From IMG/VR virus record IMGVR_UViG_3300042562_001598, positions 186,001 to 250,000 of that record: a stretch of 64,000 bases of DNA; one strand, 5' to 3'. The translations under genes were made by a program, and so were the position numbers. Below are positions 8,847-32,353 of this stretch, piece after piece (position 1 is the first letter of the stretch; each line of letters begins with the position of its first letter). The notes below the pieces were generated by a model, which made no database searches, was not told the origin of the DNA, and saw nothing but the letters and a program-made list of their open reading frames with translations.

Positions 8847-8995
8847 CAAACAAGGTGACGCTACAGTCGTAAGATTCCGGAATCGAGAAGACAAAGAGCC
8901 TAAGTGTAAAGATGAGCTCCTACAGCCTTGGACTACTATTAAGGAATGATACGAGCCTCCAAAGTTCGAAAGGAGTCAGGTAGTAGTCAAAAATT

Positions 8996-9067
8996 GGACT
9001 TGTAGCTCAGTAGGAGAGCATTCGCCTGTTAAGCGAAGGGTCGGGATGGCAGAATTCCCCAAGTCCG
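8996..9067 (+). tRNA. tRNA-Asn(GUU)
   Basis: GGACTTG/CAAGTCC; loop CTGTTAA; atypical T-loop. Confidence 0.8.
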
Positions 9068-9143
9068 CGGAGTCCTGATATAACAGGAAACCCCCACTCC
9101 CATATGGCAGCCGGTCCGTTAAGCCGGTGAAGTGGGGTAATAT

Positions 9144-9215
9144 GGTGTTTCTAGCTTAATTGGTAAAGTGCTACACTGTGAATGTAGAGAACAGGGTTCG
9201 AAACCCGGAAACACA
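9144..9215 (+). tRNA. tRNA-His(GUG)
   Basis: G-1 plus GTGTTTC/GAAACAC; loop CTGTGAA. Confidence 0.88.
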
Positions 9216-9284
9216 CAAAAGGAACAGAATAATACCTGGACAGTCTTCAAGGAGACAGGGTAAAGTTTGGACAGCTCCTTAATT

Positions 9285-9355
9285 ACACAATACAGGCAAG
9301 GTGTCGGTCAAGTCTCCAAAACTTAGGCGGGTAAGTTCGATTCTTACATTGTGTG
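9285..9355 (+). tRNA. tRNA-Trp(CCA)
   Basis: ACACAAT/ATTGTGT; loop CTCCAAA; TTCGATT. Confidence 0.8.
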
Positions 9356-9392
9356 CAAAAAAGAAATGTTTAATTATTAATTATTAATTATT

Positions 9393-9899
9393 GTGAGTAA
9401 GTACCAGAAAACATTAGTTTTAGATTCCAGTTTTACCGCTAGAAGTATCATAACCACGGAGAGAGCTTTTGCTATTCATTATAAGGGAAACGCTGACGTA
9501 ATAAAAGAACACCCAGAAACATTTGGTTTAGTTAATCCAGACTTAAAGATTAAAAAACCATCAGTTATCAAAGTTTATAAATTTGTTAACCAAAACATCC
9601 AAAAAGTACCATTAAATAGAGACAATGTTTATCGTAGAGATAATCATCAGTGTGTTTATTGTGGATGTAATAATAGAAAGACCTTAACTTTAGACCATGT
9701 TTTACCCCAATCTAAGGGAGGAAAAGACACCTGGGACAACTTGGTTACCTGTTGTCTGAGATGTAACCGTGAGAAGTCTGATTTGACCCTGGAGGAGTAT
9801 GGTAAAGAAATACCCCAACCTAAACGACCCCACTTTTTAATGTTAATGAAACAATTGATGTATATTCCGGATGAGTGGAAACCTTATTTATTTTTTTAG
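9393..9899 (+). CDS. HNH endonuclease
   Basis: RDNHQCVYCG...TLDHVLPQSKGG...NLVTCCLRCNREK. Confidence 0.9.
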   Translation: MSKYQKTLVLDSSFTARSIITTERAFAIHYKGNADVIKEHPETFGLVNPDLKIKKPSVIKVYKFVNQNIQKVPLNRDNVYRRDNHQCVYCGCNNRKTLTLDHVLPQSKGGKDTWDNLVTCCLRCNREKSDLTLEEYGKEIPQPKRPHFLMLMKQLMYIPDEWKPYLFF

Positions 9900-9961
9900 T
9901 ATAAAATGTTTGGTGGATTGTAAAAAAGGTGTATCTTTGTAAAAATAAAAAGGTAGAAACT

Positions 9962-10198
9962 ATGGAACCAATAAAACAATTATTTTCAGATTTAAGTGAT
10001 GAAGAATTAATCTTAACAATTAAAGAGATTAAAGAATCGGATGTGACTGGATTATTTCCTGAAAACACAAATGTTAGAGCTTTATGTCAGGAATTGACTA
10101 AAATCACCAAGATGGATGTATCGTCACATTTATTGATGGTTAAAATCAATATTCTTAAAGAAGGGTCTTACAGATGGTTAAAAACAATTGAACAATAA
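9962..10198 (+). CDS. Hypothetical protein
   Basis: Start MEPIK after a TATCTTTG promoter. Confidence 0.6.
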   Translation: MEPIKQLFSDLSDEELILTIKEIKESDVTGLFPENTNVRALCQELTKITKMDVSSHLLMVKINILKEGSYRWLKTIEQ

Positions 10199-10211
10199 AA
10201 ACATAGAAATC

Positions 10212-10538
10212 ATGACATTAGAAAAAGAATTATTGGATTTTACTAACTGGTTGGTTGATAATAAATGGACCTTGGTTGGTAATGGTTTGTGTTTGAATAA
10301 CGACACTAAAAAACTTGTTTCAATTGGGGAATTGGTTCGTCAAAGTAATTCACTTAAAGATTATTACGAACAAGACTTCCAGGTGGGTGAAATTGTTAGA
10401 GAAAAGAACAGTGGTGACGAAGTTGAAATTAAAACCATTGAATATAATAAATTTGATAATGAATACCAATATTGGTATGAAGATGAAGATGGTGAGGAGT
10501 GGTATGGTTTCGCTGACGAGTTTGAGAAAATAAATTAA
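10212..10538 (+). CDS. Hypothetical protein
   Basis: ORF track; start moved to MTLEK. Confidence 0.6.
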   Translation: MTLEKELLDFTNWLVDNKWTLVGNGLCLNNDTKKLVSIGELVRQSNSLKDYYEQDFQVGEIVREKNSGDEVEIKTIEYNKFDNEYQYWYEDEDGEEWYGFADEFEKIN

Positions 10539-10597
10539 AATAAGTTTGGTATTAATAAAAAATTGATTTACATTTGCTAACACAAAACAGATAAACT

Positions 10598-10726
10598 ATG
10601 AAAACAAAGCCATCAATTACCAGTGTAGAGTTTAAGAATTTTTCAACAAGATTATGTAGAATGTATCCTGAGATAGGTTCAACATTTACAACTAAAGAAA
10701 TATACGACGAATATTTCGGTCGTTAA
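10598..10726 (+). CDS. Small hypothetical protein (42 aa)
   Basis: MKTKPSITSVEFKNFSTRLCRMYPEIGSTFTTKEIYDEYFGR after a TACATTTG promoter. Confidence 0.5.
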   Translation: MKTKPSITSVEFKNFSTRLCRMYPEIGSTFTTKEIYDEYFGR

Positions 10727-10735
10727 TTAGAATAA

Positions 10736-10807
10736 AGTCAGGTGGCTCATTGGTAAGAGCGACAGCCGAAATGGATGTGGGTACAGGTTCGATTCCTGTC
10801 CTGACAA
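10736..10807 (+). ncRNA. AGTCAGG-family tRNA-like RNA, copy 1
   Basis: AGTCAGG...ACAGG TTCGATT CCTGT CCTGACA; D-arm present; no 7-nt anticodon loop. Confidence 0.75.
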
Positions 10808-10823
10808 CAAATTTAGAAAATAT

Positions 10824-10930
10824 CCTTCTGTAGTTTAACAAGAGCAAAACACAGAGACGAATACATCTCCCTACGGTAACCATCCCAAGAATGTATTAAG
10901 AGTATGTGGGTTCAACTCCCACTGGAAGGG
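10824..10930 (+). ncRNA. tRNA-like RNA with enlarged core
   Basis: CCTTCTG/TGGAAGG acceptor, D-arm, GTGGG TTCAACT CCCAC T-arm; ~55-nt core. Confidence 0.65.
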
Positions 10931-10979
10931 CAAATCATAGGAGTAATTACCTTATGACTGAGAGATTCGAAGCTCTCGA

Positions 10980-11079
10980 TTGATTATGGTGTAAAGGCGC
11001 ACGGTAGAAGGTAGTAGGTCCGAATTATGCGAGACCGAGGGTGGAAACAGGATTAAGGTTCGAATCCTTATTAGTCAGC
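10980..11079 (+). ncRNA. tRNA-like RNA with enlarged core
   Basis: TTGATTA/TAGTCAG; TAAGG TTCGAAT CCTTA T-arm; no anticodon arm. Confidence 0.6.
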
Positions 11080-11086
11080 AAAATAA

Positions 11087-11204
11087 AGTCAGGTGGCGGA
11101 ATTGGTAGACGCAACATGGTATGGCAATACAGAGGGTGATAGTATAAGTCCTATCAGTGGTAAGTGACCTCTCTTATAACAGGTTCGAATCCTTGTCCTG
11201 ACTA
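11087..11204 (+). ncRNA. AGTCAGG-family tRNA-like RNA, copy 2
   Basis: Leu-type D-arm GGCGGAATTGGTAGACGC; ~65-nt two-hairpin core. Confidence 0.8.
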
Positions 11205-11229
11205 CAAATTTAAAATAAAAATAAAAATT

Positions 11230-11316
11230 ATGAAAAGAAAAGACGTTTACGTTTGTGTTTGTGATGGTAGTTGTACTAGTCCAGAGGATTGTTCACCAAT
11301 TAAGTCAAAACGATAA
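11230..11316 (+). CDS. Cys-rich micropeptide (28 aa)
   Basis: MKRKDVYVCVCDGSCTSPEDCSPIKSKR, A-rich start context. Confidence 0.45.
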   Translation: MKRKDVYVCVCDGSCTSPEDCSPIKSKR

Positions 11317-11323
11317 TAAAAAT

Positions 11324-11448
11324 AGTCAGGTGGCGGAAAACGAGGTATGCCAATAGGGTGTAGCCCGCAAGCAAGACGCTAATTGTAGTAAGTGTACTCA
11401 TACGACATATAATCGGTACACATACAGGTTGGAATCCTGTTCTGACTA
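11324..11448 (+). ncRNA. AGTCAGG-family tRNA-like RNA, copy 3
   Basis: Same ends; insertion in D-loop plus GTGTAC/GTACAC core hairpin. Confidence 0.75.
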
Positions 11449-11569
11449 ATAAATAGTAGAAACAACATCCCCCCAGTTTCTTGGTCTGTGCACGGATAGG
11501 ATTTGTAAGGGGGTTGAGATTGGATGACGTTTATCTTTTGTAATCCAACAATAAACAGAAAAAGATGTT

Positions 11570-11703
11570 AGTCAGGTGGCGAAAGGAGTGGGGTGTCCCT
11601 GCTCGTGGTAGACGCACACCTTTATGGTTAAAGCGGAGTGTGAAGTATAAACACACCATACAGTTAACAGTATGAATTACGGGTTCGAATCCTGTCCTGA
11701 CTA
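11570..11703 (+). ncRNA. AGTCAGG-family tRNA-like RNA, copy 4
   Basis: Same ends; hairpin inserted in D-loop; multi-hairpin core. Confidence 0.8.
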
Positions 11704-11782
11704 CGATTGCTGAGGAACGGTCCAGAGTAGTGGAATTATAGTTAAATTCAATACGTTGACAGCTTGGAAAGACAAGCAAAAC

Positions 11783-11884
11783 AGTCAGGTGGCAGAGTGG
11801 TTTAATGCTAACTAGGGAGAGTCTGAGGGTGGTAACCTAGTACCTATACCCATATGACCGCAGGTTCGAATCCTGTCCTGACTA
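11783..11884 (+). ncRNA. AGTCAGG-family tRNA-like RNA, copy 5
   Basis: Ser-type D-arm GGCAGAGTGGTTTAATGC; ACTAGG/CCTAGT stem with ~19-nt loop. Confidence 0.8.
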
Positions 11885-11893
11885 CAAATACAA

Positions 11894-12015
11894 GGTTCCT
11901 GAGATAAAGGATTAGCTTAGCACTAACTAACTAAATACTTAAACTCCAGCATAACGGTTTGCTACCCCAGTTAGTGATGGTGGTGGAAAGATAGGTTCAA
12001 CTCCTATAGGGACTA
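11894..12015 (+). ncRNA. tRNA-like RNA with long core
   Basis: GGTTCCT/AGGGACT; ATAGG TTCAACT CCTAT; CACTAACT/AGTTAGTG core stem. Confidence 0.6.
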
Positions 12016-12088
12016 CAAAGCTGACAACCTAGTGATTGATGTGTGAAGCTAACACATAAGTTGTTGACTGATGGAAAGACATCAAAAT

Positions 12089-12173
12089 AGTCAGGTGGTG
12101 AAATGGATAGACACTACCCTGTTTGGGGGAGAGGTGAAAGAAACTCGTACAGGTTCGAATCCTGTCCTGACTA
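12089..12173 (+). ncRNA. AGTCAGG-family tRNA-like RNA, copy 6
   Basis: Class-II-like shape but the anticodon arm has no canonical 7-nt loop. Confidence 0.8.
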
Positions 12174-12183
12174 CAAAATAATT

Positions 12184-12253
12184 GGTCTTGTTGGTCGAAG
12201 CGGCCGGTAAGTCTGCAAAACTTACGGAGGGGGTGCAATACCCTCCAAGACCT
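12184..12253 (+). tRNA. tRNA-Cys(GCA)
   Basis: GGTCTTG/CAAGACC, U73; loop CTGCAAA. Confidence 0.8.
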
Positions 12254-12321
12254 CAAAAGTTTAACAATTTGGTAGATACCGGTGATAATCACCGGTAAGT
12301 AAGGAAAATATAAATTAGAAA

Positions 12322-12517
12322 AGTTTAACACCTCGATGGTTGTCTGTAACCAACATATGAAACAGAATAGGCGTGTTGATAGTGGTAAGCCTCGCTAATT
12401 GTAACCGATTAAGTTCAAAGGAAGATAAGGACTAGTACGCCTGTGACGAACACGACGAATTCAGGATTTCCCATAGTAGCCCCGTTACAAACCAGAGTGC
12501 CGCAGAGGTGTTAAATT
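12322..12517 (+). ncRNA. Rod-shaped ~196-nt RNA, 6S-RNA-like architecture
   Basis: 13-bp terminal stem; TGGTT/AACCA and TGTAAC/GTTACA stems; central bubble; ATAGGCGT/ACGCCTGT closing stem. Confidence 0.5.
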
Positions 12518-12538
12518 TTTTTTAATATATTTATCAAT

Positions 12539-12922
12539 ATGAAAAAATTTGTAATTACAGAAGAAGAAAAAGACGATATATTAAACCAACATAACGAAAT
12601 GATGGATAAACCAAAACTTCCGGAAAATAGAAGAATGTTAGATTTGGATATAACTCCAATGAGTTTAAAAAAATTTAAGTCTCAAGGTCTTACACCATAT
12701 TACTATGATGGTGATACTGATATTATTGAAATGAAAGGTCCAATTAAAGGTAAAGTATATAATACAAAACCAAAAGAAGTTTTCTTATTAACATCTGATG
12801 AATATGATAAGATTAAACAATTATCAGATAAAATTAAGGAAATGATTGAACTTAAATTATACACTATTAAACTATATAAGGAATACCTCCCATCTAGTTT
12901 AATTAAAATTGTGGAAAAATAA
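12539..12922 (+). CDS. Leader-family cargo protein
   Basis: MKKFVITEEEKDDILNQH leader; TATTTAT upstream. Confidence 0.7.
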   Translation: MKKFVITEEEKDDILNQHNEMMDKPKLPENRRMLDLDITPMSLKKFKSQGLTPYYYDGDTDIIEMKGPIKGKVYNTKPKEVFLLTSDEYDKIKQLSDKIKEMIELKLYTIKLYKEYLPSSLIKIVEK

Positions 12923-12983
12923 AAAAAATATTCTAAAAAGTTTGTGGATATTAGAAAAAGAGTTATCTTTGTCAAAGAAAATA

Positions 12984-13115
12984 AGTCTTAGCCGAAAAGA
13001 CTGAGCACAAAACTAGAGTTTGTGTAGGAATACATCTAAAGATGGTGGCTAAGTGGGTCTCTTGGATACACCCGACCAAGCGTAAGGCGACAACACGTTA
13101 GGGAAAGCTGTCGTA
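12984..13115 (+). ncRNA. Unknown structured RNA with its own promoter and terminator
   Basis: TATCTTTG at 12964; several hairpins; terminator AACCCCCAA/TTGGGGGTTTT at ~13121-13146. Confidence 0.55.
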
Positions 13116-13220
13116 ATACTAACCCCCAACTATAATTGGGGGTTTTATAAAAAAAATTAAAAATACTTTACACTTTAGTGAATTAGTATATATTTATTAG
13201 AAATAACAATAAAACAACAA

Positions 13221-13295
13221 ATGAAAAATCTAAACATATCACTTACAATAGCGGCAACTGAGGGTAGAGATACAACTTGGATGTTGATGGTATGA
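13221..13295 (+). CDS. Putative leader peptide 2 (24 aa)
   Basis: MKNLNISLTIAATEGRDTTWMLMV followed by terminator 13318-13354, upstream of the second tRNA cluster. Confidence 0.5.
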   Translation: MKNLNISLTIAATEGRDTTWMLMV

Positions 13296-13415
13296 AATAT
13301 ATTTAACTAAAAATATTAAAAAATCCATCTTCAAAAAAAAGGTGGATTTTTTTTTATGTGTTGTTGTTATAATCAAATATTATCCTTATCTTTGTTAAAA
13401 GAAATTATAAAAAAT

Positions 13416-13592
13416 ATGAAAGATACAAAAACTAACCAGGAGGTTACATTAAACGAAGAATTGGTGATGGAGTATTCACCAATATTAGGAACAACATACA
13501 CATTAAAACCAGTTGAGTGGGATGAAGACCACGCGTTTAGTTTAGTTCTAAATGATATCCTTGATGATTTGGATATTGATGAGTTAAAATAG
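13416..13592 (+). CDS. Small hypothetical protein
   Basis: Start moved to MKDTK after TATCTTTG. Confidence 0.5.
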   Translation: MKDTKTNQEVTLNEELVMEYSPILGTTYTLKPVEWDEDHAFSLVLNDILDDLDIDELK

Positions 13593-13601
13593 TAATACAA
13601 T

Positions 13602-13673
13602 GGCCCGGTCGTCTAAAAGTTAGGACCTCACATTTTCATCGTGAAAACCGGGGAGCGTTACCCCGTCGGGCTA
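13602..13673 (+). tRNA. tRNA-Glu(UUC)
   Basis: GGCCCGG/TCGGGCT; loop TTTTCAT; T-loop AGCGTTA. Confidence 0.8.
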
Positions 13674-13696
13674 CGAAAGATATAAAATAAATTCAC

Positions 13697-13776
13697 GCGG
13701 TTGTGAAAGATATAGGTGAATGTCGGGTTCGATTCCCGGCAACCAGGACGGTTCGACTCCGCTGGTGCTGGCCGCA
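13697..13776 (+). ncRNA. Double-T-arm tRNA-like RNA
   Basis: Two tandem TTCGA(T/C)T hairpins closed by GCGGTT/GGCCGC. Confidence 0.55.
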
Positions 13777-13807
13777 ATATACTATTTCATTTTTTATATC
13801 TTTAATT

Positions 13808-13879
13808 GGGGCTATCGTATAAAAGCTATTACAATGGTTTTGCAAATCATAGAACACGGAGCGTTACCGTGTAGCTCCA
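13808..13879 (+). tRNA. tRNA-Ala(UGC)
   Basis: GGGGCTA/TAGCTCC with G3:U70; loop TTTGCAA; T-loop AGCGTTA. Confidence 0.88.
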
Positions 13880-13946
13880 CAAAAAAAACAAAAATAAGTT
13901 TGATTATTAAAATAATATAACTTAAATTTGTAGAGAATAAAAACAA

Positions 13947-14017
13947 AGTCTAGTAGTGAAAAAGAATCATCCAACACTGTCACTGTTGAGTAGCCGGAGC
14001 ATTACCGGTCTAGACTG
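13947..14017 (+). tRNA. tRNA-Asp(GUC)
   Basis: AGTCTAG/CTAGACT, G73; loop CTGTCAC; T-loop AGCATTA. Confidence 0.82.
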
Positions 14018-14034
14018 CAAAATAAATAATACAT

Positions 14035-14105
14035 CGCGGGAAGCTAAGTAGCAGTCGGGTCTCATAAGCCATGATGTGTAGTAGGAGCGTTACCTTCTCC
14101 CGCAA
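14035..14105 (+). tRNA. tRNA-fMet(CAU), divergent
   Basis: C1:A72 mismatch; loop CTCATAA; weak anticodon stem; T-loop AGCGTTA. Confidence 0.65.
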
Positions 14106-14127
14106 CTAATTTAATAAATAATTAACT

Positions 14128-14301
14128 ATGGCTACAGCACCGCAAAAATCAAGAAAACAAAGAGCTTTAAGTGTTCTTGAAACACAATTAAGTAATTCAG
14201 TTAAAACTGAAAAAGGAACAACAGATGTTAAAATTCCTCTAACTGAAGCAGATGTTAAGAGAATTAAAAAAGAAATTGAAATCTTAAAAACAAGAGTTTA
14301 A
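14128..14301 (+). CDS. Small basic protein (57 aa)
   Basis: MATAPQKSRKQRALSVLE...VKRIKKEIEILKTRV; phage-like codon usage. Confidence 0.6.
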   Translation: MATAPQKSRKQRALSVLETQLSNSVKTEKGTTDVKIPLTEADVKRIKKEIEILKTRV

Positions 14302-14310
14302 TTTAGTTCC

Positions 14311-14382
14311 GCGGGTGTCGTATAATGGTCATTACAATTGACTTCCAATCAATAGACGAGATTTCGATTATCTCCATCCGCT
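14311..14382 (+). tRNA. tRNA-Gly(UCC)
   Basis: GCGGGTG/CATCCGC, U73; loop CTTCCAA. Confidence 0.88.
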
Positions 14383-14570
14383 CTTTCTCAGAGAATTACG
14401 ACGAAAACTGGGTTTTAGCCCCTGTTATAACACCACCAAGATACTCTAGCAATTCCGGATTAGTTAGGTTGCGGTGATAAGGAAATAAGTCGGGTATAGC
14501 TAACCAAAAAGACGAAAACCTTGTAGTGGATTATGGTGACGCTCCATAGCAGTAAATCTCTTATTATAAT

Positions 14571-14640
14571 AATTGGGTAGCTCAGTGGATAGAGCAGTCA
14601 ATATATTGATGTGCCGGTGGTTTGATTCCACCCCCAATTA
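14571..14640 (+). ncRNA. tRNA-like RNA with collapsed anticodon loop
   Basis: AATTGGG/CCCAATT; canonical D-arm; GTCAA-TATA-TTGAT arm with a 4-nt loop. Confidence 0.65.
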
Positions 14641-14644
14641 TAAC

Positions 14645-14719
14645 ACCCCCATGGGCAAACTGGTAAAGTCGCTTCACTTAGGATGAAGAGTTCTGTGAGT
14701 TCAACTCTCACTGGGGGTA
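14645..14719 (+). tRNA. tRNA-Leu(UAG) with short variable arm
   Basis: ACCCCCA/TGGGGGT; loop CTTAGGA; TTCAACT. Confidence 0.8.
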
Positions 14720-14723
14720 CAAA

Positions 14724-14793
14724 TTAGAATTAGCTTATAGTAAAGCGGCAGGAGTTTAACTTACTGCATAACGGATTCCAACACCGGTTCTAA
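14724..14793 (+). ncRNA. Degenerate tRNA-like element
   Basis: TTAGAAT/GTTCTAA acceptor and D-arm; irregular anticodon and T arms. Confidence 0.4.
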
Positions 14794-15376
14794 TTTTTTA
14801 TAAAATAAAATAGGTTTATAAGTATAGATTTTATATATTTGTTAAAATAAACATAACCCAGTAGATAGGTCCGCCAAGAAAGTCTTTAAACAACGTGGGA
14901 ACTGCGGCTCTCCCAATGTGGCTGGAATGTTTTAATAAAAGGCTGAACATCGAACCTTTGTAATAGACTATAAAAGGTCTTTAAGACGTAGTATTGTAAT
15001 AAATATTATGCTTTACATAAAGATATCAACAGAGATGTTGAATGCGTTGTTCCCTTGAGAAAGGAAAATAGAGTGGCTACAAGGTTGTTGCAACAACTAG
15101 TAAAGACTAACGCAAATGAGCTCTCAGCAAGCAACCTGTTTGGGTTCATCCAGCAGCTGCGTGACCCTACTCTTATACAAGCTCCGTAACTGATAACTCG
15201 GCAAGCTATAAGAAAGGGTGCTAAATAAAAACTACTTGAGTAAGTGGGGGTGGTCAATCAACAACCCATTGAAGTTTCAGGTGAATATATAGACAGGATT
15301 GGTGAGTCTATATAAGTAAGTAACAAGTTAATGTGTTTTTAGAAAGATTGAATAGTTTTTAACATTGGCGAAAAAT

Positions 15377-15460
15377 AGTCAGGTGACGTAATGTAAACGT
15401 TATGGTGCAAGTCCATTTCAACTCAAGTGAGTAATATAGGTGCGAATCCTGTTCTGACTA
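15377..15460 (+). ncRNA. AGTCAGG-family tRNA-like RNA, copy 7
   Basis: Same acceptor; core contains a second T-loop-like hairpin ATGG-TGCAAGT-CCAT. Confidence 0.75.
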
Positions 15461-15676
15461 CAATGAGTAAGAGATACTCAGAAGTCTTTAATCCAAGACT
15501 TTTTAACAATGGATTGGGTAATGAATTGGACATCCTCAAAGCCAATTCCTTGGGTGAAAGACAGGTAGTAGCGTCTCCAAGTAAACTTGACTTTTTTGTT
15601 TGGGTAAGACCGTCTTCGTTTTTGAAAGGATAAAACGAGTAATATCTACACCGAAATATCTCATCGGTGGTTTTTT

Positions 15677-15748
15677 GGTCTCGTAGCTCAAAGGTGGAGC
15701 AGTTCGCTCATAACGAAAAGGATGGGATATCGTAATTCCCCGAGACCA
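15677..15748 (+). tRNA. tRNA(CAU): elongator Met or Ile2
   Basis: GGTCTCG/CGAGACC; loop CTCATAA; atypical T-loop ATCGTAA. Confidence 0.8.
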
Positions 15749-15872
15749 CAAATTATCCCCCCTTTGTGTTCTATCACATCGGCCAACCTCCAGGGAAACT
15801 TGGGGGTTTTTTTAAAAAATATTATGTGAAACTTAAATATAATTTATTTATATTTGTAAAAAGAAAATAAGT

Positions 15873-20110: not shown

Positions 20111-20647
20111 ATGGTAAATTTTATAAATCCCCAACCAAAATCGAGTAGTTCCATAATTGTTGCACCTTACCCTGGTGAGGTTATTGAAGTTGACCCATCA
20201 GTATGTGATGGTAATATAAAAATAAAACATAACATTAATGGTGTTAGTTATATTTCAGAATTTTGTAATGTAGAGAGAATTAGTGTTCGTGTTGGTGAAT
20301 CTGTTAGACAAAAGGAAAAAATAGGTAATTTGGGTTATAAATCGTTAAAATCTTGGGTGTATGATAACCATGGTAAAAAATACTCAATGACACACTTTAT
20401 TAATGATACTGAAAAAGATAAAGAGTCAAAAGTAACAACTACAAAAAAAGAAAAAAAACAACCTATAAATTATGATACAAAATATTCTGGGTTAGCTAAA
20501 TTACCGATTGATGTTCTTTTATCACCACTTTCATTAATGAAGGATGTTATGTCTTACAAGACCGATAAACAAAAACAAAAGGAAAAGGAAAAAGAAGAAC
20601 AAAATTTAAACGAAGAAATTAATAGAATAAAAGAATTATTAAAATAA
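20111..20647 (+). CDS. M23-fold protein lacking the HxH motif
   Basis: VAPYPGEV...IKIKH...VRVGESVRQKEKIG; C-terminal LNEEINRIKELLK. Confidence 0.55.
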   Translation: MVNFINPQPKSSSSIIVAPYPGEVIEVDPSVCDGNIKIKHNINGVSYISEFCNVERISVRVGESVRQKEKIGNLGYKSLKSWVYDNHGKKYSMTHFINDTEKDKESKVTTTKKEKKQPINYDTKYSGLAKLPIDVLLSPLSLMKDVMSYKTDKQKQKEKEKEEQNLNEEINRIKELLK

Positions 20648-20679
20648 AAAACCCCCAAGTTAATGGGGGTTTTTAGTTA

Positions 20680-20889
20680 TTATTGTTTTGCAACTTCTTT
20701 AACTGGTTCAACAACTTTAGTTGTGTCAGCTTTAGTAGAGTCAGCTTTAACTTCAACTTTTGTTGAATCAACAACAACTGCTGTAGAATCGGTAACAACT
20801 GCTTCAACATTTCCTTCAGTTTCATTGTGTTTGCAAGATGCGAACGTCAAGGCAGCTACTGCCAACATAGATAAAATTACTTTTTTCAT
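20680..20889 (-). CDS. Small Bacteroidota-type lipoprotein
   Basis: MKKVILSMLAVAALTFASC lipobox; DST/DTT repeats. Confidence 0.8.
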   Translation of the reverse strand: MKKVILSMLAVAALTFASCKHNETEGNVEAVVTDSTAVVVDSTKVEVKADSTKADTTKVVEPVKEVAKQ

Positions 20890-20982
20890 AAAAATTTGTT
20901 TTAGTTTATTATTTATAGATAATTAATAGGTATAAAAGATTTGAATGTCAAGTCGGGTAATAAAAATAAAAATATTGTAAGT

Positions 20983-21207
20983 ATGACAGTTGCTGAACTA
21001 ATAATAAAATTAAATACCATTGAGAATCAAAACGCTCCTGTTTTTGTGAAAGGTTATGAAGATGGGTTAGATGATATTACTTTTGATAATAAATTACATA
21101 ATGTATTATTAAATGTGAATAGTGAATGGTATTATGGTAAACACGAATTAACTTACACTAATAATAGTAAAACTCATAAAATTGTTGAAGGGGTGATAAT
21201 TTCTTAA
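20983..21207 (+). CDS. Small phage protein
   Basis: MTVAELIIKL...VKGYEDG pattern. Confidence 0.6.
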   Translation: MTVAELIIKLNTIENQNAPVFVKGYEDGLDDITFDNKLHNVLLNVNSEWYYGKHELTYTNNSKTHKIVEGVIIS

Positions 21208-21334
21208 AAACCATTTGACAAACCAAAAGTCATGACCTATACTTTTTAAGAGTTTAATAAAAATGTTATTAAATGAAAAAAAAATACAAAATATAGTTTA
21301 CAACTGAAAAAGAATAACTATCTTTGTAAAACAA

Positions 21335-22210
21335 ATCGGGAATAACCGATATCGTTCTTTGAGAAAACAGATTATCCATTATAATACTTCGGTATTGTAA
21401 AAAACGATAATGGGCGGCTTATAGTCCTTATATAAATTGATGAAAATCAATATAAAGTGAATCTGTTGTGTTAACAGATTTGCGGTTTCAGAAATGGAAC
21501 TCAAGTAAGCAAGCAGGATACTATATAATCTTGATTACCGAGGCCAACGGTGTAGGGAAAGTGATTATATAACTGGGTGATGTGGGTCATCTGGTTGAGG
21601 GGGGAACTCTAATAGGAATAACCTGTAGGATTTGTGCAAAAAATATGATTATCCAATTATATTATTGCGACTTCCAAAATTAAAGGAAACTTAAAACCGA
21701 AAGGTATGACAACAAACAGGTGGTGCTGAAATTGTCCTTGATACTTATCTACCAAGGTAAATATCTCGAAGTAGTCTTGAAATTTGAGAGTAGGGATACT
21801 CTAAGATGAAGTTAAGTATTCTGATGTCCAAAAGATATCGGAGCTTGGGGTAAACCACTTCGTCTATTCATCCACAACACAATACCTTATACTTTATTTA
21901 AGTAAAACTAAAAAAATGTAAGCAAAAGTGTTTACCACTATGAAACGGAAGTTGCCCACATATTCACTGGCTGTCAGTGGAACGTAATAACCGCAAGTTT
22001 GACCGTATTTTTATGAAAAATCTCTAAGCCGTCGGAAGCTGAATCAGGACGCAATCTTGATGAGACAGGAGTAGTAAGAGAGTAGTTTCATAGTTAAGGG
22101 GTGATTGGTCTAACCAATCGGCAATGAGAAATACTAATCAAAAGTTAGTGGAAAAGTAGGGAAACCATAATCCTATGAAAGGTTCTTAAAATTAAAGTTT
22201 ATTCTCAGCT
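21335..22210 (+). ncRNA. Giant structured ncRNA (~870 nt), candidate GOLLD-class
   Basis: ORF-free; own TATCTTTG promoter and terminator (~22238-22274); many hairpins with UUCG/GNRA loops; family identity not verified. Confidence 0.7.
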
Positions 22211-22285
22211 TTTTTTATTTTTTATCAAAACATACAGAAAATCCTTTAACAAAATAATGTTAAAGGATTTTTTTGTTAATTGATA

Positions 22286-22293
22286 TATTTATA
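22286..22293 (+). promoter_or_regulatory. Phage late-promoter motif TATTTAT(A), representative copy
   Basis: Found shortly upstream of >15 structural/leader genes (e.g. 243, 4790, 18931, 26412, 34004, 39933, 41822, 44264, 49297). Confidence 0.7.
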
Positions 22294-22306
22294 ATAAAAA
22301 ACTAAT

Positions 22307-22717
22307 ATGAAAAATTTATTTAATGACATTTCTCAAGAAGAGAAAAATAGAATCCTTGAGATGCACTCGGGTAAAAAAAATGTGATATCTGAACAAGAAA
22401 TTGGTGGTTACAAAGAAGGACCTGGTGACCCTCAAGGTGATGAACTTGACCACTATAATAAAATTGTAAAACCAAAATTGTTAGCTGTAGGTTTTAAAGA
22501 TGAATATGATAAAAATTTAAAACAATTTGGCACGGAGAATTCTTTAACTTATGGTGGACACAATAACGGTGTTAATGTCCTATGGGATAGAATAAAAGGG
22601 GTTTATCATGTGTGGGCCGGAAATGATAAGGGAAAACGACAATTCCAACTTGGTCCAAATGACCCAAAAGTTGTCGCTAATAAAGTTGTTCAGTACGCTT
22701 TATCATTAAAGAGATAA
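22307..22717 (+). CDS. Leader-family cargo protein
   Basis: MKNLFNDISQEEKNRILEMHSGKKNVISEQ leader identical to that of 26412. Confidence 0.75.
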   Translation: MKNLFNDISQEEKNRILEMHSGKKNVISEQEIGGYKEGPGDPQGDELDHYNKIVKPKLLAVGFKDEYDKNLKQFGTENSLTYGGHNNGVNVLWDRIKGVYHVWAGNDKGKRQFQLGPNDPKVVANKVVQYALSLKR

Positions 22718-22788
22718 TAAATGACAAATAAACCACCAATTATGGTGGTTTTTTTTGTTTTTATAATATTTTTATTTACATTTGTTCT

Positions 22789-23241
22789 ATGAAAAAAGAA
22801 ATCAACATAGTCAATAAGAAAGCGAAACACGAATACGAGTTTTTACAGACTTACGTATGCGGCGTTAAGCTAATCGGTTGTGAAGTAAAATCAATACGCC
22901 TAGGTAAGGTTTCCATATCCGAGGGGTATTGTTACTTCAACAATAACGAATTATTCATTAAAGGAATGAACATATCTGATTATGGTTACGGCACAGTCCA
23001 TGATAACACCTCAGATAGAAAGTTATTATTAAAACGGAAAGAGTTAAACAAATTAGAAAAAGAACTCGTAAAAGGCCTTACAATCGTTCCTTACAGGGTC
23101 TTTACAAATGAGAGAGGATTGATTAAAATAGAGATATCCCTATCTCGTGGTAAAAAGAACTACGATAAAAGAAATGACCTAAAGTCCAGGGATATTGATA
23201 GAGATAGTAAAAGAGAAATTAGTGGTCGGTTCACAAAATAA
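22789..23241 (+). CDS. smpB: SsrA-binding protein
   Basis: NKKAKHEY, GVKLIGCEVKSIR, RKLLL, RGKKNYDKR. Confidence 0.95.
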   Translation: MKKEINIVNKKAKHEYEFLQTYVCGVKLIGCEVKSIRLGKVSISEGYCYFNNNELFIKGMNISDYGYGTVHDNTSDRKLLLKRKELNKLEKELVKGLTIVPYRVFTNERGLIKIEISLSRGKKNYDKRNDLKSRDIDRDSKREISGRFTK

Positions 23242-23265
23242 ATAAATTAAAAAAAAATTAAAATT

Positions 23266-23571
23266 ATGGTAGATTTAATGTCATTAGCGTTAGGGGTAGT
23301 TGCAGTTCTTATTGTATTGGGGGTTGTGATTATGTTTTATGCTGTCAATCAAGTTTTTTTACTTAAAAAAAAGTTTGGTTATTTAGAAAAAGAAACACAA
23401 GATAATTATAACTTCTTACATAGAAGGATTAACGAATCAGAAATAAGTTCAGAACAAATGGTTATGCGGTCACACAATCATATTGATGAGGTTGAAAAAC
23501 AATTAATAAGTATGATTGACTCCAGGTTGGATAAACTGGAAAATAAAATAATCCAAAAACAAGTATTATAA
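23266..23571 (+). CDS. Membrane-anchored coiled-coil protein
   Basis: N-terminal TM; IDSRLDKLENK. Confidence 0.6.
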   Translation: MVDLMSLALGVVAVLIVLGVVIMFYAVNQVFLLKKKFGYLEKETQDNYNFLHRRINESEISSEQMVMRSHNHIDEVEKQLISMIDSRLDKLENKIIQKQVL

Positions 23572-23676: not shown

Positions 23677-24063
23677 TGGTGGAGATGCCGGGATTTGAAC
23701 CCGGGTCTTGCCCATCCTAAAGATTAAGGACTACACGCTTAGGTCAACATTTTTCTAATGTTCCGAAAATAGTTAGTTCGTTCTTCACCATTGTAAACTA
23801 ACAACCAATGGATGACTCGATTTCGGGTTCAGTCATTTTTCCACCTTTGTAAGACCTTATGTTCCTGGGTTATATGGTTACCGACCCGTTGTTGTTCAAC
23901 TAATTAAGCTGTAACAACTTCTTCAGAGCGGATTAATCCTACTGCTGAAAGTTTTGCGATTGTTTCGCCGTTTGAATTTTGTGACCATAGATTTAAGTGA
24001 TAGGAAACTTCTCACTGCGTGCCCCCAATAAATAGCAATGCCAATCAATACCATTTCATCCCC
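23677..24063 (-). ncRNA. ssrA: tmRNA
   Basis: GGGGATG/CATCTCC-ACCA with G3:U70; T-arm GGTTCAAATCC; tag ORF GETIAKLSAVGLIRSEEVVTA* at 23969-23904. Confidence 0.92.
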
Positions 24064-30101: not shown

Positions 30102-32153
30102 TTATTCGTCCCCTTTTTTCTTTCTACCTCTTTTCAAAGGTTCTTTATTTTTAGTTATAATAACTTCTTTATCTACAACATCAACCACACTTGAGTCCCC
30201 CTCGTTAATTTCACCTTTCAAAATCTCTTCAGAGATGAAGTCTTCAATTTTATCTTGAATAGCTCTTTTAATAGGTCTTGCTCCATAGTTTTCATCATAA
30301 CCAACATCAGATATCAATTCAGTTACTTTATCGGTATAACTAAAGTTATATTTGATTTTAGCAAGACGACCCATTAGTTTATCTAATTCTAAAGTAACAA
30401 TCTTTTTAACATTCTCTTTATCTAAAGATTTAAACATAATAACATCATCAATTCTGTTTAAGAATTCAGGCGCGAAGAATTTTTTAAGTTCAGCTTTAAG
30501 GATATCGTTTTTAAGTTCTTGTTCAATATATTCGTTACCACCATTTTTAAATCCAACACCAGTTCCGAAGTCTTGTAATTTTTTAACACCTAAATTAGAT
30601 GTCATAATGATAAGACAGTTTTTAAAGTTAATTTTTTTACCTAAAGAGTCAGTTAAGTGACCTTCATCTAACATTTGTAAAAGTGTTGAGAAGATATTTT
30701 TATCCGCTTTTTCAATCTCATCAAATAAGATAACAGAGTAAGGTTTATTTTTAACTTCATTAGTTAAGAATCCACCTTCTTCGTGGGCAACATAACCTGG
30801 AGGAGAACCTATAAGTCTTGAGATTGTATGTTTTTCTTGATATTCTGACATATCAATTCTAATCATATTTTCTTCACTACCAAAAATTTCTTTTGCTAAT
30901 TGTTTTGCTAAATAAGTTTTTCCTACTCCGGTAGAACCTAAAAAGATGAATGAACCAATTGGACGATTTGGGTCTTTAATACCTAATCTATTTCTTCTGA
31001 TAGCTTTTGCGATTTTAACCACGGCTTCAGGTTGACCAACAACTTTATCAGCTAAAGCTTGTTCTAAATTAACTAATGCTTTAGTATCGTCAATTGATAA
31101 TTTTGATACAGGTATTTTAGTCATATTAGATACAACTTCATATACTAGTTCTTCAGGAATTTCTCTTTTATGAGCTTGTAATTCCGCTTCAAATTTTATT
31201 TTTTCATCCTCTAATTTTGATAGAATTCGTTTTTCTTTATCTCTAAGATTAGCCGCTTCTTCATAGTTTTGTTTTTTAACTACCTCAATTTTTTCCAATT
31301 TAATATCTGACGCTTGTTGTTTTAATTTTTCAATTATTTCAGGCATCTTAATATCAACTTGACTTCTCGCACCAACTTCGTCTAAAATATCAAAAGCTTT
31401 ATCCGGGAATTCTCTGTCGGTAATGTATCTATCCGCTAAATCAACACAAATTTCTAAAATAGAATCAGTGTAATTTACTTTATGATATGATTCATATTTT
31501 TCTTTAGCGTTTTTCAAGATGATTAATGTTTCTTCTTTTGTTGCAGAATCAACAATAACCTTTTGAAATCTTCTTTCTAATGCTCCGTCTTTTTCAAAGT
31601 TTTTTCTATATTCATCTAAAGTTGTTGCTCCAACACATTGGATTTCACCTCTTGCTAAAGCTGGCTTAAAGATGTTTGACGCATCCATTGACCCGGATGA
31701 ATTTCCCGCACCAACAATGGTGTGAATCTCATCAATGAATACAATTATGTTTGGAGAGTTTTGTAACTCCTCAATAATAACTTTCATTCTTTCTTCAAAT
31801 TGTCCACGGTATTTTGTTCCTGCAACAATGGATGTCATATCTAAAGATACGATTCTTTTATCCATTAAGTTTCTTGGACAATCCCCATTATATATTTTAA
31901 TTGCAAGACCTTCAACGATTGCAGTTTTACCACAACCAGGTTCACCTAATATAATAGGATTATTTTTCTTTCTACGAGAAAGAATTTGAGCAATCCTAGT
32001 GATTTCTCTTTCACGACCAACTACAGGGTCTAATTTACCTTCTTCAGCTAACTTTATTAAGTCTCTACTAAAGTTATCTAATACAGGTGTTGTTGATTCT
32101 GAGATGGAATTTGATTTTTTTCCTTTTTCGTCATTATCTGAAAATTCTATCAT
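30102..32153 (-). CDS. clpC: ClpC-like AAA+ unfoldase lacking the N-terminal Clp-repeat domain
   Basis: Walker A motifs GEPGCGKT and GSTGVGKT; FIDEIH; UVR M-domain QNYEEAANLRD; GARP. Confidence 0.92.
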   Translation of the reverse strand: MIEFSDNDEKGKKSNSISESTTPVLDNFSRDLIKLAEEGKLDPVVGREREITRIAQILSRRKKNNPIILGEPGCGKTAIVEGLAIKIYNGDCPRNLMDKRIVSLDMTSIVAGTKYRGQFEERMKVIIEELQNSPNIIVFIDEIHTIVGAGNSSGSMDASNIFKPALARGEIQCVGATTLDEYRKNFEKDGALERRFQKVIVDSATKEETLIILKNAKEKYESYHKVNYTDSILEICVDLADRYITDREFPDKAFDILDEVGARSQVDIKMPEIIEKLKQQASDIKLEKIEVVKKQNYEEAANLRDKEKRILSKLEDEKIKFEAELQAHKREIPEELVYEVVSNMTKIPVSKLSIDDTKALVNLEQALADKVVGQPEAVVKIAKAIRRNRLGIKDPNRPIGSFIFLGSTGVGKTYLAKQLAKEIFGSEENMIRIDMSEYQEKHTISRLIGSPPGYVAHEEGGFLTNEVKNKPYSVILFDEIEKADKNIFSTLLQMLDEGHLTDSLGKKINFKNCLIIMTSNLGVKKLQDFGTGVGFKNGGNEYIEQELKNDILKAELKKFFAPEFLNRIDDVIMFKSLDKENVKKIVTLELDKLMGRLAKIKYNFSYTDKVTELISDVGYDENYGARPIKRAIQDKIEDFISEEILKGEINEGDSSVVDVVDKEVIITKNKEPLKRGRKKKGDE

Positions 32154-32353
32154 ATTATTATTATTATTTTGTTTTGTTAATGATATCAATAATTATAACA
32201 AAAATTATTCTATGAATCAATATTGACAATTTGTCAGTATATTTTTTTATAAAATGTCAAATTGTCATATAAATAAGTCATTTTACTATAAATTTGACTT
32301 TGGTATAAAATTAGTTATAATTATTTCAAATAAAAAATTAAAACAAAAAAATT

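What the first reader, a model, noticed from the sequence alone, without database searches (positions are those of the whole stretch)
21335..22210. ~870-nt stand-alone, highly structured ncRNA
Seen: an ORF-free, GC-richer unit with its own promoter and terminator and many hairpins (TATAATAC-TTCG-GTATTGTA, ATTGAT-GAAA-ATCAAT, AATCTGTT/AACAGATT, ACC-GAAA-GGT, AGAGTA/TACTCT, TCTGATGTC/GATATCGGA, TTCACTG/CAGTGGAA, GATTGG/CCAATC). Established: GOLLD RNAs are about 800 nt, phage-associated, often near tRNAs and of unknown function. Inference: a GOLLD member or a new giant RNA class.
Basis: partly seen in the sequence, partly recalled or inferred. Interest (0 to 1): 0.7.

Follow-up and report, generated by a model that had tools for sequence, protein, structure and literature searches.

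The report
GOLLD RNA of a lake jumbo phage
The ORF-free structured stretch is a full-length GOLLD RNA, a known family of giant phage non-coding RNAs that build RNA-only nanocages and whose function is unknown; here it is a stand-alone gene in a 282-kb freshwater phage, so it is a new member of a known family and not a new class.

Summary
Rfam's GOLLD model (RF02032) matches window 21804-22211 (+) end to end at 273 bits against a cut-off of 150 (E 7e-77).

The upstream half (21412-21803) is the GOLLD 5' domain. It aligns with 28 non-redundant relatives from viral contigs and huge phages. Of its 129 predicted pairs, 97 show compensatory changes and 97.7% of cells are paired, against about 40% when partners are slid. 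It lines up by eye with the 5' domain of GOLLD env-38, whose cryo-EM structure is a 14-mer nanocage.

The sequence determinants of all ten published inter-subunit bridges are present. The J13/15-L20 contact covaries perfectly across the 29 sequences.

The unit runs from about 21331 to 22216 (about 886 nt). It has a Bacteroidota-type promoter (TATCTTTG, 21319-21326), a conserved 5' leader outside the solved construct, and a terminator hairpin at 22239-22270.

Lake metatranscriptomes cover 21452-22223 at word depths of hundreds to thousands, and the flanking ORFs at about zero.

The host is a 282-kb phage. Its 13 tRNAs, GOLLD and a tmRNA all lie within 16 kb. The biological function remains unknown.

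The parts
21297..21326 (+). Putative promoter of Bacteroidota sigma-A type: a weak -33 element, TTTACA (21297-21302), and a -7 box, TATCTTTG (21319-21326). The predicted start is near 21331.
   Evidence: TTTG-N17-22-TAnnTTTG occurs upstream of 15 of 29 relatives, against 3.3% of random 190-nt segments of the same loci. The -7 box sits at an identical offset in 9 sequences. That this motif is a Bacteroidota promoter is established knowledge and was not tested here. A rival sigma-70-like site lies at 21215-21243, scoring 11 of 12.
21331..21411 (+). 5' leader. It comprises hairpin 21335-21350; the near-invariant single-stranded GUUCUUUGA at 21354-21362; and a long hairpin at 21371-21411, closed by AUUAUC/GAUAAU, whose apical part is 21380-21399 (UUCG loop).
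   Evidence: The motif is conserved in nearly all 29 aligned sequences. The leader lies upstream of the first residue of the env-38 cryo-EM construct, judged by eye against Suppl. Table 4 of PMC12286853. The pairing comes from the MFE fold. Its role is unknown.
21412..21803 (+). GOLLD 5' domain core, which forms the cap of the half-shell in the env-38 structure. It includes:
- L3 GAAA hairpin, 21436-21451
- hairpin 21460-21480
- GAGG..AAC, 21540-21548
- GGAA tetraloop, about 21603-21606
- L10 loop UUAUCCAAU, 21649-21657
- P11a/L11a ACC-GAAA-GGU, 21696-21705
- CAG-GUGGUG-CUG hairpin, 21717-21728
- CUACCAAGG, 21749-21757
- P12/L12 AGAGUA-GGGA-UACUCU, 21787-21802
   Evidence: RNAalifold on 29 sequences predicts 129 pairs, 97 with compensatory changes, and a covariation term of -38 kcal/mol. 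The domain shows blastn similarity to huge phages LR756502 and LR745206, which also carry GOLLD 3' domains.
21804..21866 (+). P13/P14 hairpin with the conserved CAAAA loop (21829-21833). This is the start of the Rfam GOLLD model.
   Evidence: Infernal alignment, model positions 1-62. The helix covaries in A3. The loop is invariant in the 29 sequences.
21867..21919 (+). AU-rich, G-poor linker (J13/15), which is interior and disordered in the env-38 cage. It holds a conserved AUCCACAACACAA (21870-21882) and a small hairpin, UACUU-UAUUU-AAGUA (21890-21904). No tRNA is embedded.
   Evidence: Linker comparison across 29 sequences. ARAGORN and Rfam find no tRNA here. The linker's location in the cage is taken from PMC12286853.
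21920..22211 (+). Remainder of the conserved GOLLD 3' domain. It includes:
- J13/15 GC, 21922-21923
- 10-bp pseudoknot, 21937-21946 with 22085-22094
- hairpin 21963-21982
- L20 CCGCAAG, 21991-21997
- L21a loop UCGG, 22032-22035
- L21b loop, GC at 22051-22052
- hairpin 22103-22119
- CAAAAG loop hairpin, 22133-22149
- GGGAAACCAUAAUCC, 22159-22173
- L27 UUAUUCUCAGC, 22199-22209
   Evidence: Rfam RF02032 match at 273.3 bits, E 7e-77, full model length.
22210..22279 (+). 3' end region: a T7 run (22210-22216) right after the last GOLLD helix, then an intrinsic-terminator hairpin, AAAUCCUUUAAC/GUUAAAGGAUUU (22239-22270), followed by a T run (22268-22274).
   Evidence: Terminator scan and coordinates. 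RNA contigs reach 22223, and in one relative at least 19 nt further. Depth falls to near zero (at most 2.5) in 22219-22319 and is zero beyond 22320.

Best explanation
This is a full-length GOLLD RNA gene of about 886 nt (roughly 21331-22216, + strand) in a 282-kb freshwater jumbo phage.

Shown here:
- It matches the GOLLD covariance model end to end.
- Its 5' half is a conserved, covarying GOLLD 5' domain of the same type as env-38.
- It is ORF-free.
- RNA of this clade is abundant in lake metatranscriptomes, while RNA of the neighbouring genes is not.

Inferred mechanism:
- It is transcribed as a stand-alone unit from a Bacteroidota-type promoter (-7 box 21319-21326) and ends at the T run or terminator at 22210-22279.
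- It folds into two domains joined by an unstructured AU-rich linker.
- Like env-38, it self-assembles without protein into a D7 14-mer nanocage. The 5' domains form the caps, the 3' domains form the rings, and the linkers face inward.
- The contacts holding the cage together are L3 GAAA, the L10-L12 kissing loops, GUGGUG-ACCA, L14 CAAAA, J13/15-L20, the self-kissing L21a and L21b loops, and the CAAAAG loop.

The biological role is not established for any GOLLD. The most likely reading is a lytic-cycle RNA compartment or scaffold tied to the phage's translation-RNA set (tRNAs, tmRNA, ribosomes). This part is inference from gene context only.
For: Identity:
- Rfam GOLLD match at 273.3 bits against a gathering score of 150, E 7e-77, model 1-416 of 416. 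It is the only GOLLD in the 282-kb genome.
- All 28 relatives collected through 5'-domain motifs also pass the GOLLD cut-off, at 243-334 bits.

5' domain:
- 129 consensus pairs, 97 with compensatory changes.
- 97.7% of cells are paired, against 38-43% with slid partners and 76.7 +/- 0.5% in partner shuffles.
- 97 compensatory pairs, against 30-41 with slid partners and 66 +/- 3 in shuffles.
- Reverse-strand consensus energy is -25 kcal/mol, against -138 on the + strand.

Cage contacts:
- The env-38 residues are listed in Suppl. Table 2 of PMC12286853, and the env-38 sequence is in Table 4.
- The corresponding motifs are all present in the window.
- The J13/15-L20 dinucleotides covary without exception in 29 sequences, as GC/GC, UC/GA or GG/CC. 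env-38 has GA/UC.
- L21a switches between CG-core loops (UCGA, UCGG) and GC-core loops, and the L21b GC is invariant. Both agree with the published B8 and B9 self-kissing loops.
- Both P11a and P21b are present. Their absence distinguishes the 12-mer Sag GOLLD (PMC12990946).

Expression:
- Word depth is mostly tens to thousands over 21452-22223 in four lake metatranscriptomes, patchier in the 3' part in two of them. Depth is zero or near zero over the flanking ORFs at 20300-21400 and 22320-23300.
- One 696-nt contig (21481-22125, 97% identical) spans both domains.

Phage context:
- Terminase, portal and major head protein are present.
- All 13 ARAGORN tRNAs of the genome, GOLLD and a tmRNA lie within 16 kb.
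Against: - No oligomer was or could be tested here. Stoichiometry differs among GOLLDs: 10-, 12- and 14-mers are reported.
- The mapping of bridge residues onto the window was done by eye against a sequence printed in a supplement, whose numbering is uncertain by 1-2 nt.
- In the other sub-clade (L011 and relatives) I could not find L10-L12 complementarity, so the cap contacts are not uniform.
- The RNA contigs are Logan unitigs, mostly from relatives at 90-99% identity. They carry no strand information and do not define the ends.
- The 5' leader and 21412-21451 are uncovered.
- The promoter assignment rests on motif conservation and on an inferred Bacteroidota host. The only other host clue is a terminase 28% identical to that of a Flavobacterium phage.
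- Nothing here bears directly on function.
Confidence: 0.85

Rival explanations
1. It is a GOLLD member that assembles into a different oligomer (10- or 12-mer, as reported for Streptococcus agalactiae GOLLD), or into no closed cage, because its cap contacts and extra 5' leader differ from env-38.
For: Stoichiometry varies with secondary-structure elements within the family (PMC12990946). The window has an 81-nt leader that is absent from the solved construct. L10-L12 complementarity varies among relatives.
Against: The window has the elements whose absence marks the 12-mer form: P11a at 21696-21705, and both the L21a and L21b hairpins. The determinants of all ten env-38 bridges are present.
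Confidence: 0.12
2. These are two separate RNAs. Only 21804-22211 is the GOLLD RNA, and 21335-21803 is an independent structured RNA or a processed-off precursor part.
For: The Rfam model covers only the 3' half. The RNA contigs are fragmented, and depth differs several-fold along the unit.
Against: The 5' half is alignable by eye to residues 1-420 of env-38, which are part of the same chain in the solved structure. In about 55 viral loci the 5' and 3' halves always occur together, in the same order and spacing. A 696-nt RNA contig bridges them. No promoter or terminator motif lies between them.
Confidence: 0.03
3. It is a new giant RNA class unrelated to GOLLD, or a long cis-regulatory leader of the downstream ORF 22307-22717.
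For: None beyond its size and its position upstream of a same-strand ORF.
Against: There is a full-length GOLLD model match. A terminator hairpin and T runs separate it from the ORF. RNA depth is zero over the ORF. Relatives have different downstream neighbours: tRNA, convergent tmRNA, or other ORFs.
Confidence: 0.01

Closest known systems
GOLLD RNA env-38 (marine metagenome; cryo-EM 14-mer, PDB 9MEE; Kretsch et al. 2025, PMC12286853)
   Same: The two-domain architecture is the same, with an alignable 5' domain. The first conserved motif of the window, GGGCGGCUUAUAGUCC, corresponds to the env-38 start AUGGCCGCUAUGGUCG. They also share the L3 GAAA, L11a GAAA, GUGGUG/ACCA loops, L12 GGGAUA loop, L14 CAAAA, both L21a and L21b hairpins, and an AU-rich interior linker.
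   Different: The window has a conserved 81-nt 5' leader that is not in the construct. Its J13/15-L20 pair is GC/GC, against GA/UC in env-38. Its L21a core is CG (UCGG), against GC. It stands alone behind its own promoter, 5.6 kb from the nearest tRNA-CAT, whereas env-38 lies directly downstream of a Met-tRNA. It comes from freshwater, and env-38 from a marine sample.
GOLLD RNAs of uncultured huge phages LR756502 (642 kb) and LR745206 (635 kb), and of about 55 IMG/VR contigs
   Same: They have the same full-length architecture and are 55-73% identical over about 950 nt. All pass the Rfam GOLLD cut-off.
   Different: Many relatives are fused to a tRNA with a CAT anticodon or sit inside 20-25-gene tRNA arrays. 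The window's copy is detached from the tRNAs.
Streptococcus agalactiae GOLLD (12-mer; 3' domain alone mainly a 10-mer; PDB 9L0R and 9LMF as listed in PMC12990946)
   Same: It has the same conserved 3' domain and the same family of contacts: L14-P21, L15/J13-15 with L20, and L21 with L21.
   Different: Sag GOLLD lacks P9, P11a-c and P21b. The window has P11a and P21b, so it resembles env-38 more closely.
ROOL RNA (RF03087)
   Same: It is also a large phage- or prophage-associated RNA found near tRNA islands, and it forms an RNA-only nanocage.
   Different: Its sequence and fold are unrelated, and it forms an 8-mer. No Rfam ROOL match reaches the gathering score in the window.

Membership tests
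GOLLD RNA (Rfam RF02032) | Match to the family covariance model at or above the curated gathering score | tested here: met
   273.3 bits against 150, E 7e-77, model positions 1-416 of 416, window 21804-22211 +. Reproduced on the whole genome.
GOLLD RNA (Rfam RF02032) | Conserved 3'-domain helices and the long-range pseudoknot are base-paired in this sequence | tested here: met
   The Infernal alignment shows only about ten non-canonical positions. The pseudoknot ACUAUGAAAC (21937-21946) with GUUUCAUAGU (22085-22094) forms 10 perfect pairs.
GOLLD RNA (Rfam RF02032) | Large size (about 800 nt or more), with a less conserved 5' domain joined to the 3' domain by a variable linker | tested here: met
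   The ORF-free unit is about 886 nt. The 5' domain is supported by 97 compensatory pairs in 29 sequences. The linker is 53 nt and G-poor.
GOLLD RNA (Rfam RF02032) | Covarying J13/15-L20 contact (reported in 2009 and shown to be intermolecular bridge B7 in 2025) | tested here: met
   The window has GC (21922-21923) and GC (21993-21994). All 29 sequences are complementary, in three variants. The feature definition is from PMC12286853.
GOLLD RNA (Rfam RF02032) | Located in a phage or prophage, typically near tRNA genes | tested here: met
   The record is a 282-kb virus with terminase, portal and major head protein. A 13-tRNA island lies 5.6 kb upstream and a tmRNA 1.5 kb downstream. Relatives are adjacent to tRNA-CAT or inside tRNA arrays.
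GOLLD RNA (Rfam RF02032) | Expressed as a long RNA, with expression rising during phage lysis | tested here: inconclusive
   RNA of this clade is abundant in lake metatranscriptomes, and flanking genes are silent. The contigs are short, carry no strand information and come mostly from relatives. The ends and the timing in the infection cycle cannot be read from them.
GOLLD RNA (Rfam RF02032) | Protein-free homo-oligomeric nanocage (14-mer for the env-38 type) | not testable with these tools
   Only the sequence determinants of the ten bridges could be checked. All are present, by eye against Suppl. Tables 2 and 4 of PMC12286853.
ROOL, OLE, HEARO and raiA large RNAs | Match to the respective Rfam covariance model at the gathering score | tested here: not met
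   The window-wide cmscan at gathering thresholds lists only GOLLD, tmRNA and tRNAs.

The most novel reading that the evidence does not exclude
In a clade of freshwater, probably Bacteroidota-infecting, large phages, GOLLD is functionally coupled to the phage's own translation-rescue and initiation RNAs.

Observations behind this:
- GOLLD lies tail-to-tail with a phage tmRNA in the window and its four closest relatives (gaps from 113 nt to 2.4 kb). In a fifth locus (L044) it lies directly behind a tmRNA.
- It is fused to or near a tRNA with a CAT anticodon in about half of the relatives.
- It carries a conserved 5' leader (GUUCUUUGA) outside the solved structure, which could control processing or cage assembly.

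If real, the cage would act on tmRNA, initiator tRNA or ribosomes during infection.
Probability: 0.12. Interest if true: 0.65.

Novelty: new member of a known kind. Interest (0 to 1): 0.3.

Why it matters
GOLLD has been known since 2009 and its nanocage structure since 2025, but its function is still unknown. This copy adds no new principle. It is a clean, stand-alone transcription unit with a recognisable promoter and terminator, in a nearly complete 282-kb phage genome that recurs in many lake metagenomes and metatranscriptomes.

With its roughly 55 relatives it gives three things:
- A full-length 5'+3' alignment with strong covariation.
- Independent confirmation, from sequences that I gathered for this report, of the intermolecular contacts seen by cryo-EM.
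- Two context clues that could guide functional work: a recurrent neighbouring phage tmRNA, and a conserved leader missing from the solved constructs.

Tried and rejected
- Motif scan 1. A scan of viral contigs with the 15-mer GGCGGCTTATAGTCC gave 26 loci, about half of them unrelated GC-rich chance hits. I filtered them with an nhmmer profile.
- Motif scan 2.
- env-38 locus. I tried to fetch env-38 as a locus, to map cryo-EM residue numbers by computation. A 24-mer from its printed sequence has no exact match in viral contigs or metagenome contigs. The mapping was therefore done by eye, and the printed sequence and table numbering disagree by 1-2 nt in places.
- Pair-counting tool. I did not use the count of structure pairs, because it would have needed a 656-character typed structure. 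The same measures and controls were computed in a script.
- Leader pairing. I tested whether the leader motif GUUCUUUGA pairs with the GAAG at 21770-21773, as the single-sequence MFE fold suggests. This is rejected: that GAAG belongs to a helix with clear covariation to 21687-21690, and a U-to-A change in L117 and L098 is not compensated.
- Leader motif elsewhere. I tested whether the motif is a genome-wide signal. It is not enriched in the window: 25 matches with up to one mismatch, against 30 +/- 6 expected.
- Swapped loops. I considered that L21a and L21b are swapped relative to env-38. This is rejected after comparing the 29 sequences: L21a simply alternates between CG and GC cores, as published.
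- tmRNA detection. ARAGORN does not call the window's tmRNA, but Rfam does.
- Literature. A search for a reported GOLLD function, or a GOLLD-tmRNA link, found none in the held library.

Full report
**What is there**

Window 21208-22306 has no ORF longer than 41 aa. It is richer in G+C (0.34-0.37) than its flanks (0.23-0.26) and than the genome average of 0.302.

A window-wide cmscan against Rfam 15 at gathering thresholds gives one strong match here. It is GOLLD (RF02032) at 21804-22211 on the + strand, 273.3 bits against a cut-off of 150, E 7e-77, covering model positions 1-416 of 416. No other large-RNA family (ROOL, OLE, HEARO, raiA) reaches its threshold.

The window is part of a 282,192-bp virus record judged 96% complete, and this is its only GOLLD. 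PHROG matches to large terminase, portal and major head protein confirm a tailed phage.

**The 5' half**

The Rfam model covers only the conserved 3' domain, so the 5' half needed its own test. The stretch 21412-21677 has blastn similarity to two uncultured huge phages, LR756502 and LR745206. Both carry a full GOLLD 3' domain immediately downstream, at 275 and 287 bits.

Two motif scans of IMG/VR contigs were filtered with an nhmmer profile. They yielded about 55 loci in which the 5' and 3' halves occur together in the same order. Twenty-eight of these are non-redundant at 95% identity, and they are 55-73% identical to the window. All 28 pass the Rfam GOLLD cut-off, at 243-334 bits.

RNAalifold on the 5' part (window 21330-21872 plus the 28 relatives) predicts 129 pairs. 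Of these, 97 have at least one sequence with both sides changed and the pair kept. The covariation term is -38 kcal/mol.

Controls from my own script:

| Measure | Observed | Partners slid 1-3 columns | 200 partner shuffles |
|---|---|---|---|
| Cells forming standard pairs | 97.7% | 38-43% | 76.7 +/- 0.5% |
| Pairs with compensatory changes | 97 | 30-41 | 66 +/- 3 |

The reverse-complement alignment folds to -25 kcal/mol, against -138 on the + strand. The single-sequence MFE z-score is -3.4 on + and -1.9 on -. The 5' half is therefore a conserved structured RNA on the + strand.

The eighth (21380-21399) lies in a variable leader where many relatives also have UUCG-capped hairpins.

**Relation to the solved structure**

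Kretsch et al. 2025 (PMC12286853) showed that GOLLD env-38 forms a protein-free D7 14-mer cage. Its 5' domain (residues 1-420) forms the caps, its 3' domain (421-833) forms the rings, and a disordered linker (497-538) points inward.

The env-38 sequence printed in their Supplementary Table 4 lines up by eye with the window from GGGCGGC (21412) onward. Their Supplementary Table 2 lists the residues of ten inter-subunit bridges. The mapping below was done by eye, and the printed numbering is uncertain by 1-2 nt. All ten sets of sequence determinants are present in the window.

| Bridge | Determinant in the window | Coordinates |
|---|---|---|
| B1 | L3 GAAA loop | 21442-21445 |
| B2 | GAGG..AAC | 21540-21548 |
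| B3 | GGAA tetraloop | about 21603-21606 |
| B4 | L10 UAUCC, complementary over 5 bp to L12 GGAUA | 21650-21654 and 21794-21798 |
| B5 | GUGGUG loop and ACCA | 21720-21725 and 21751-21754 |
| B6 | L14 CAAAA | 21829-21833 |
| B7 | J13/15 GC and L20 GC | 21922-21923 and 21993-21994 |
| B8 | L21a UCGG, self-complementary with G-U pairs and a CG core | 22032-22035 |
| B9 | L21b GC | 22051-22052 |
| B10 | CAAAAG loop | 22139-22144 |

B7 is the most informative. Across my 29 sequences the two dinucleotides are complementary without exception, as GC/GC, UC/GA or GG/CC. env-38 has GA/UC.

L21a alternates between CG-core and GC-core loops, and the L21b GC is invariant. This matches what the paper reports for bridges B8 and B9.

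A 2026 review (PMC12990946) notes that the 12-mer Streptococcus agalactiae GOLLD lacks P9, P11a-c and P21b. The window has P11a (ACC-GAAA-GGU, 21696-21705) and both L21 hairpins, so it is of the env-38 type. Assembly into a 14-mer is thus the best inference, but it was not and could not be tested here.

**Boundaries and transcription**

Upstream of the conserved core lies an 81-nt leader (21331-21411). This leader lies upstream of the first residue of the env-38 construct.

Immediately upstream is TATCTTTG (21319-21326), preceded by TTTACA (21297-21302). Stand-alone relatives share TTTGAC-N19-21-TAnnTTTG at the same place. The strict pattern occurs in 15 of 29 upstream regions, against 3.3% of random segments of the same loci. 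The -7 box sits at an identical offset in nine sequences. From established knowledge, this is the Bacteroidota sigma-A promoter consensus. It predicts a start near 21331 and a Bacteroidota host. The nearest cultured terminase, from a Flavobacterium phage at 28% identity, is weakly consistent with that host.

A sigma-70-like TTGACA-17-TATACT at 21215-21243 is a rival start site that I cannot exclude.

In other relatives the same promoter type precedes a tRNA with a CAT anticodon that abuts GOLLD. This implies co-transcription there.

At the 3' end, a T7 run (22210-22216) follows the last helix. A strong hairpin (22239-22270) with a T run follows that.

**Expression**

The DNA recurs in many lake and freshwater metagenomes. 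In four metatranscriptome runs, Logan contigs cover 21452-22223 at word depths mostly in the tens to thousands, and coverage is patchier in the 3' part in two of the runs. The flanking ORFs (20300-21400 and 22320-23300) have zero or near-zero depth. This argues against DNA carry-over.

One 696-nt contig (21481-22125, 97% identical) bridges both domains. Some pieces are identical to the window or differ by a single letter.

There are limits to this evidence. Most contigs come from relatives, they carry no strand information, and they do not define the ends. The leader and 21412-21451 are uncovered, apart from one low-depth contig of a relative (depth 26, against 823 for the core) that also contains upstream sequence. 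Whether the leader is retained in the mature RNA is therefore open.

**Context**

All 13 ARAGORN tRNAs of the genome lie at window 8183-15749. GOLLD follows 5.6 kb downstream. A tmRNA (Rfam, 83 bits) lies at 23677-24063 on the opposite strand. All recognisable structured-RNA genes of a 282-kb genome thus sit within 16 kb.

The convergent GOLLD-tmRNA arrangement recurs in the four closest relatives, with gaps from 113 nt to 2.4 kb. A fifth locus, L044, has a tmRNA directly upstream of GOLLD on the same strand. I found no paper in the held library that links GOLLD with phage tmRNA.

**Verdict**

This is a full-length GOLLD RNA of the env-38 architectural type, and so a new member of a known family. 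The identity rests on direct tests. The nanocage mechanism is inferred from conserved contact determinants. The biological function is unknown, as for all GOLLDs.

The modest points of interest are these:
- the stand-alone promoter-terminator unit;
- the conserved leader outside the solved construct;
- independent covariation support for the cryo-EM bridges;
- the recurrent tmRNA neighbour.

Noticed in passing
window 23677-24063 (-); L080 5596-5982; L069 287-696; L119 6818-7202; L072 3921-4312; L044 8589-8940: A phage-encoded tmRNA (Rfam, 83 bits; not called by ARAGORN) lies tail-to-tail with GOLLD, 1.46 kb away. The same convergent arrangement occurs in the four closest GOLLD relatives, with gaps from 113 nt to 2.4 kb. 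In L044 a tmRNA lies directly upstream of GOLLD on the same strand, with the ARAGORN tag ANVDYSTEYYAVAA*. The six tmRNAs align well at the tRNA-like ends, but the window's tag region differs from the others.
   Followed up: partly
window 21354-21362 (and leader 21331-21411): The near-invariant GUUCUUUGA lies in a 5' leader shared by almost all 29 full-length relatives and falls outside the env-38 cryo-EM construct. No conserved pairing partner was found, and the motif is not enriched elsewhere in the window. A very similar AGTTCTTTGAT lies a few nucleotides upstream of the tmRNA 5' end in L119 and L072 (alignment A4).
   Followed up: partly
window 21870-21904: The 'disordered' interior linker is not featureless. 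It begins with a conserved AUC(C/U)AC(A/G)ACAC motif (21870-21882) and contains a small hairpin whose stem sequence varies between relatives while the pairing is kept (21890-21904). Some other GOLLDs carry an embedded tRNA at this position.
   Followed up: partly
window 8183-15749: All 13 ARAGORN tRNAs of the 282-kb genome sit in one 7.6-kb island (Rfam lists 13 tRNA matches there). The island includes unusual anticodons, Phe-AAA (10736-10808) and Pro-GGG (12089-12174), and one gene with an undetermined anticodon (14570-14641).
   Followed up: no
L003, L005, L011, L026, L027, L054 (adjacent); L008, L059, L063, L065, L095, L121 (about 180-330 nt away); L044 and L123 (downstream): About half of the GOLLD relatives have a tRNA with a CAT anticodon next to GOLLD on the same strand, usually upstream. 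Where the two abut, the Bacteroidota-type promoter motif lies in front of the tRNA, which suggests a tRNA-GOLLD co-transcript. Three loci (L035, L105, L123) place GOLLD inside arrays of 20-25 tRNA genes, and a fourth (L097) inside an array of 14.
   Followed up: partly
window 21370-21378 and 21647-21655: The 9-mer GATTATCCA occurs twice, once in the leader and once in the L10 loop region. The L10 UAUCC is complementary to the L12 loop. Most relatives of the window's clade also have (U/C)AUCC in the leader. This could be chance, a duplication, or a competitor for the L12 kissing loop.
   Followed up: no
window 30102-32189 (-): A 695-aa ORF matches PHROG 4871, 'ATP-dependent protease', at E 3e-236, with AAA+ ATPase-type secondary hits. 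It is a large FtsH/Lon-like protease gene in a phage genome.
   Followed up: no
L123 9263-9325 (-): There is an Rfam 'freshwater-1' sRNA match (72.4 bits, gathering score 72) inside the tRNA array of a GOLLD-bearing viral contig.
   Followed up: no
window 21215-21243 and 21246-21293: A near-consensus sigma-70-like promoter (TTGACA-17-TATACT, 11 of 12) lies 90 nt upstream of the Bacteroidota-type box. One metatranscriptome run (X15) shows low depth (38-76) over 21246-21293 at 80% likeness. The sequence is AT-rich and of low complexity, so this may be spurious.
   Followed up: no
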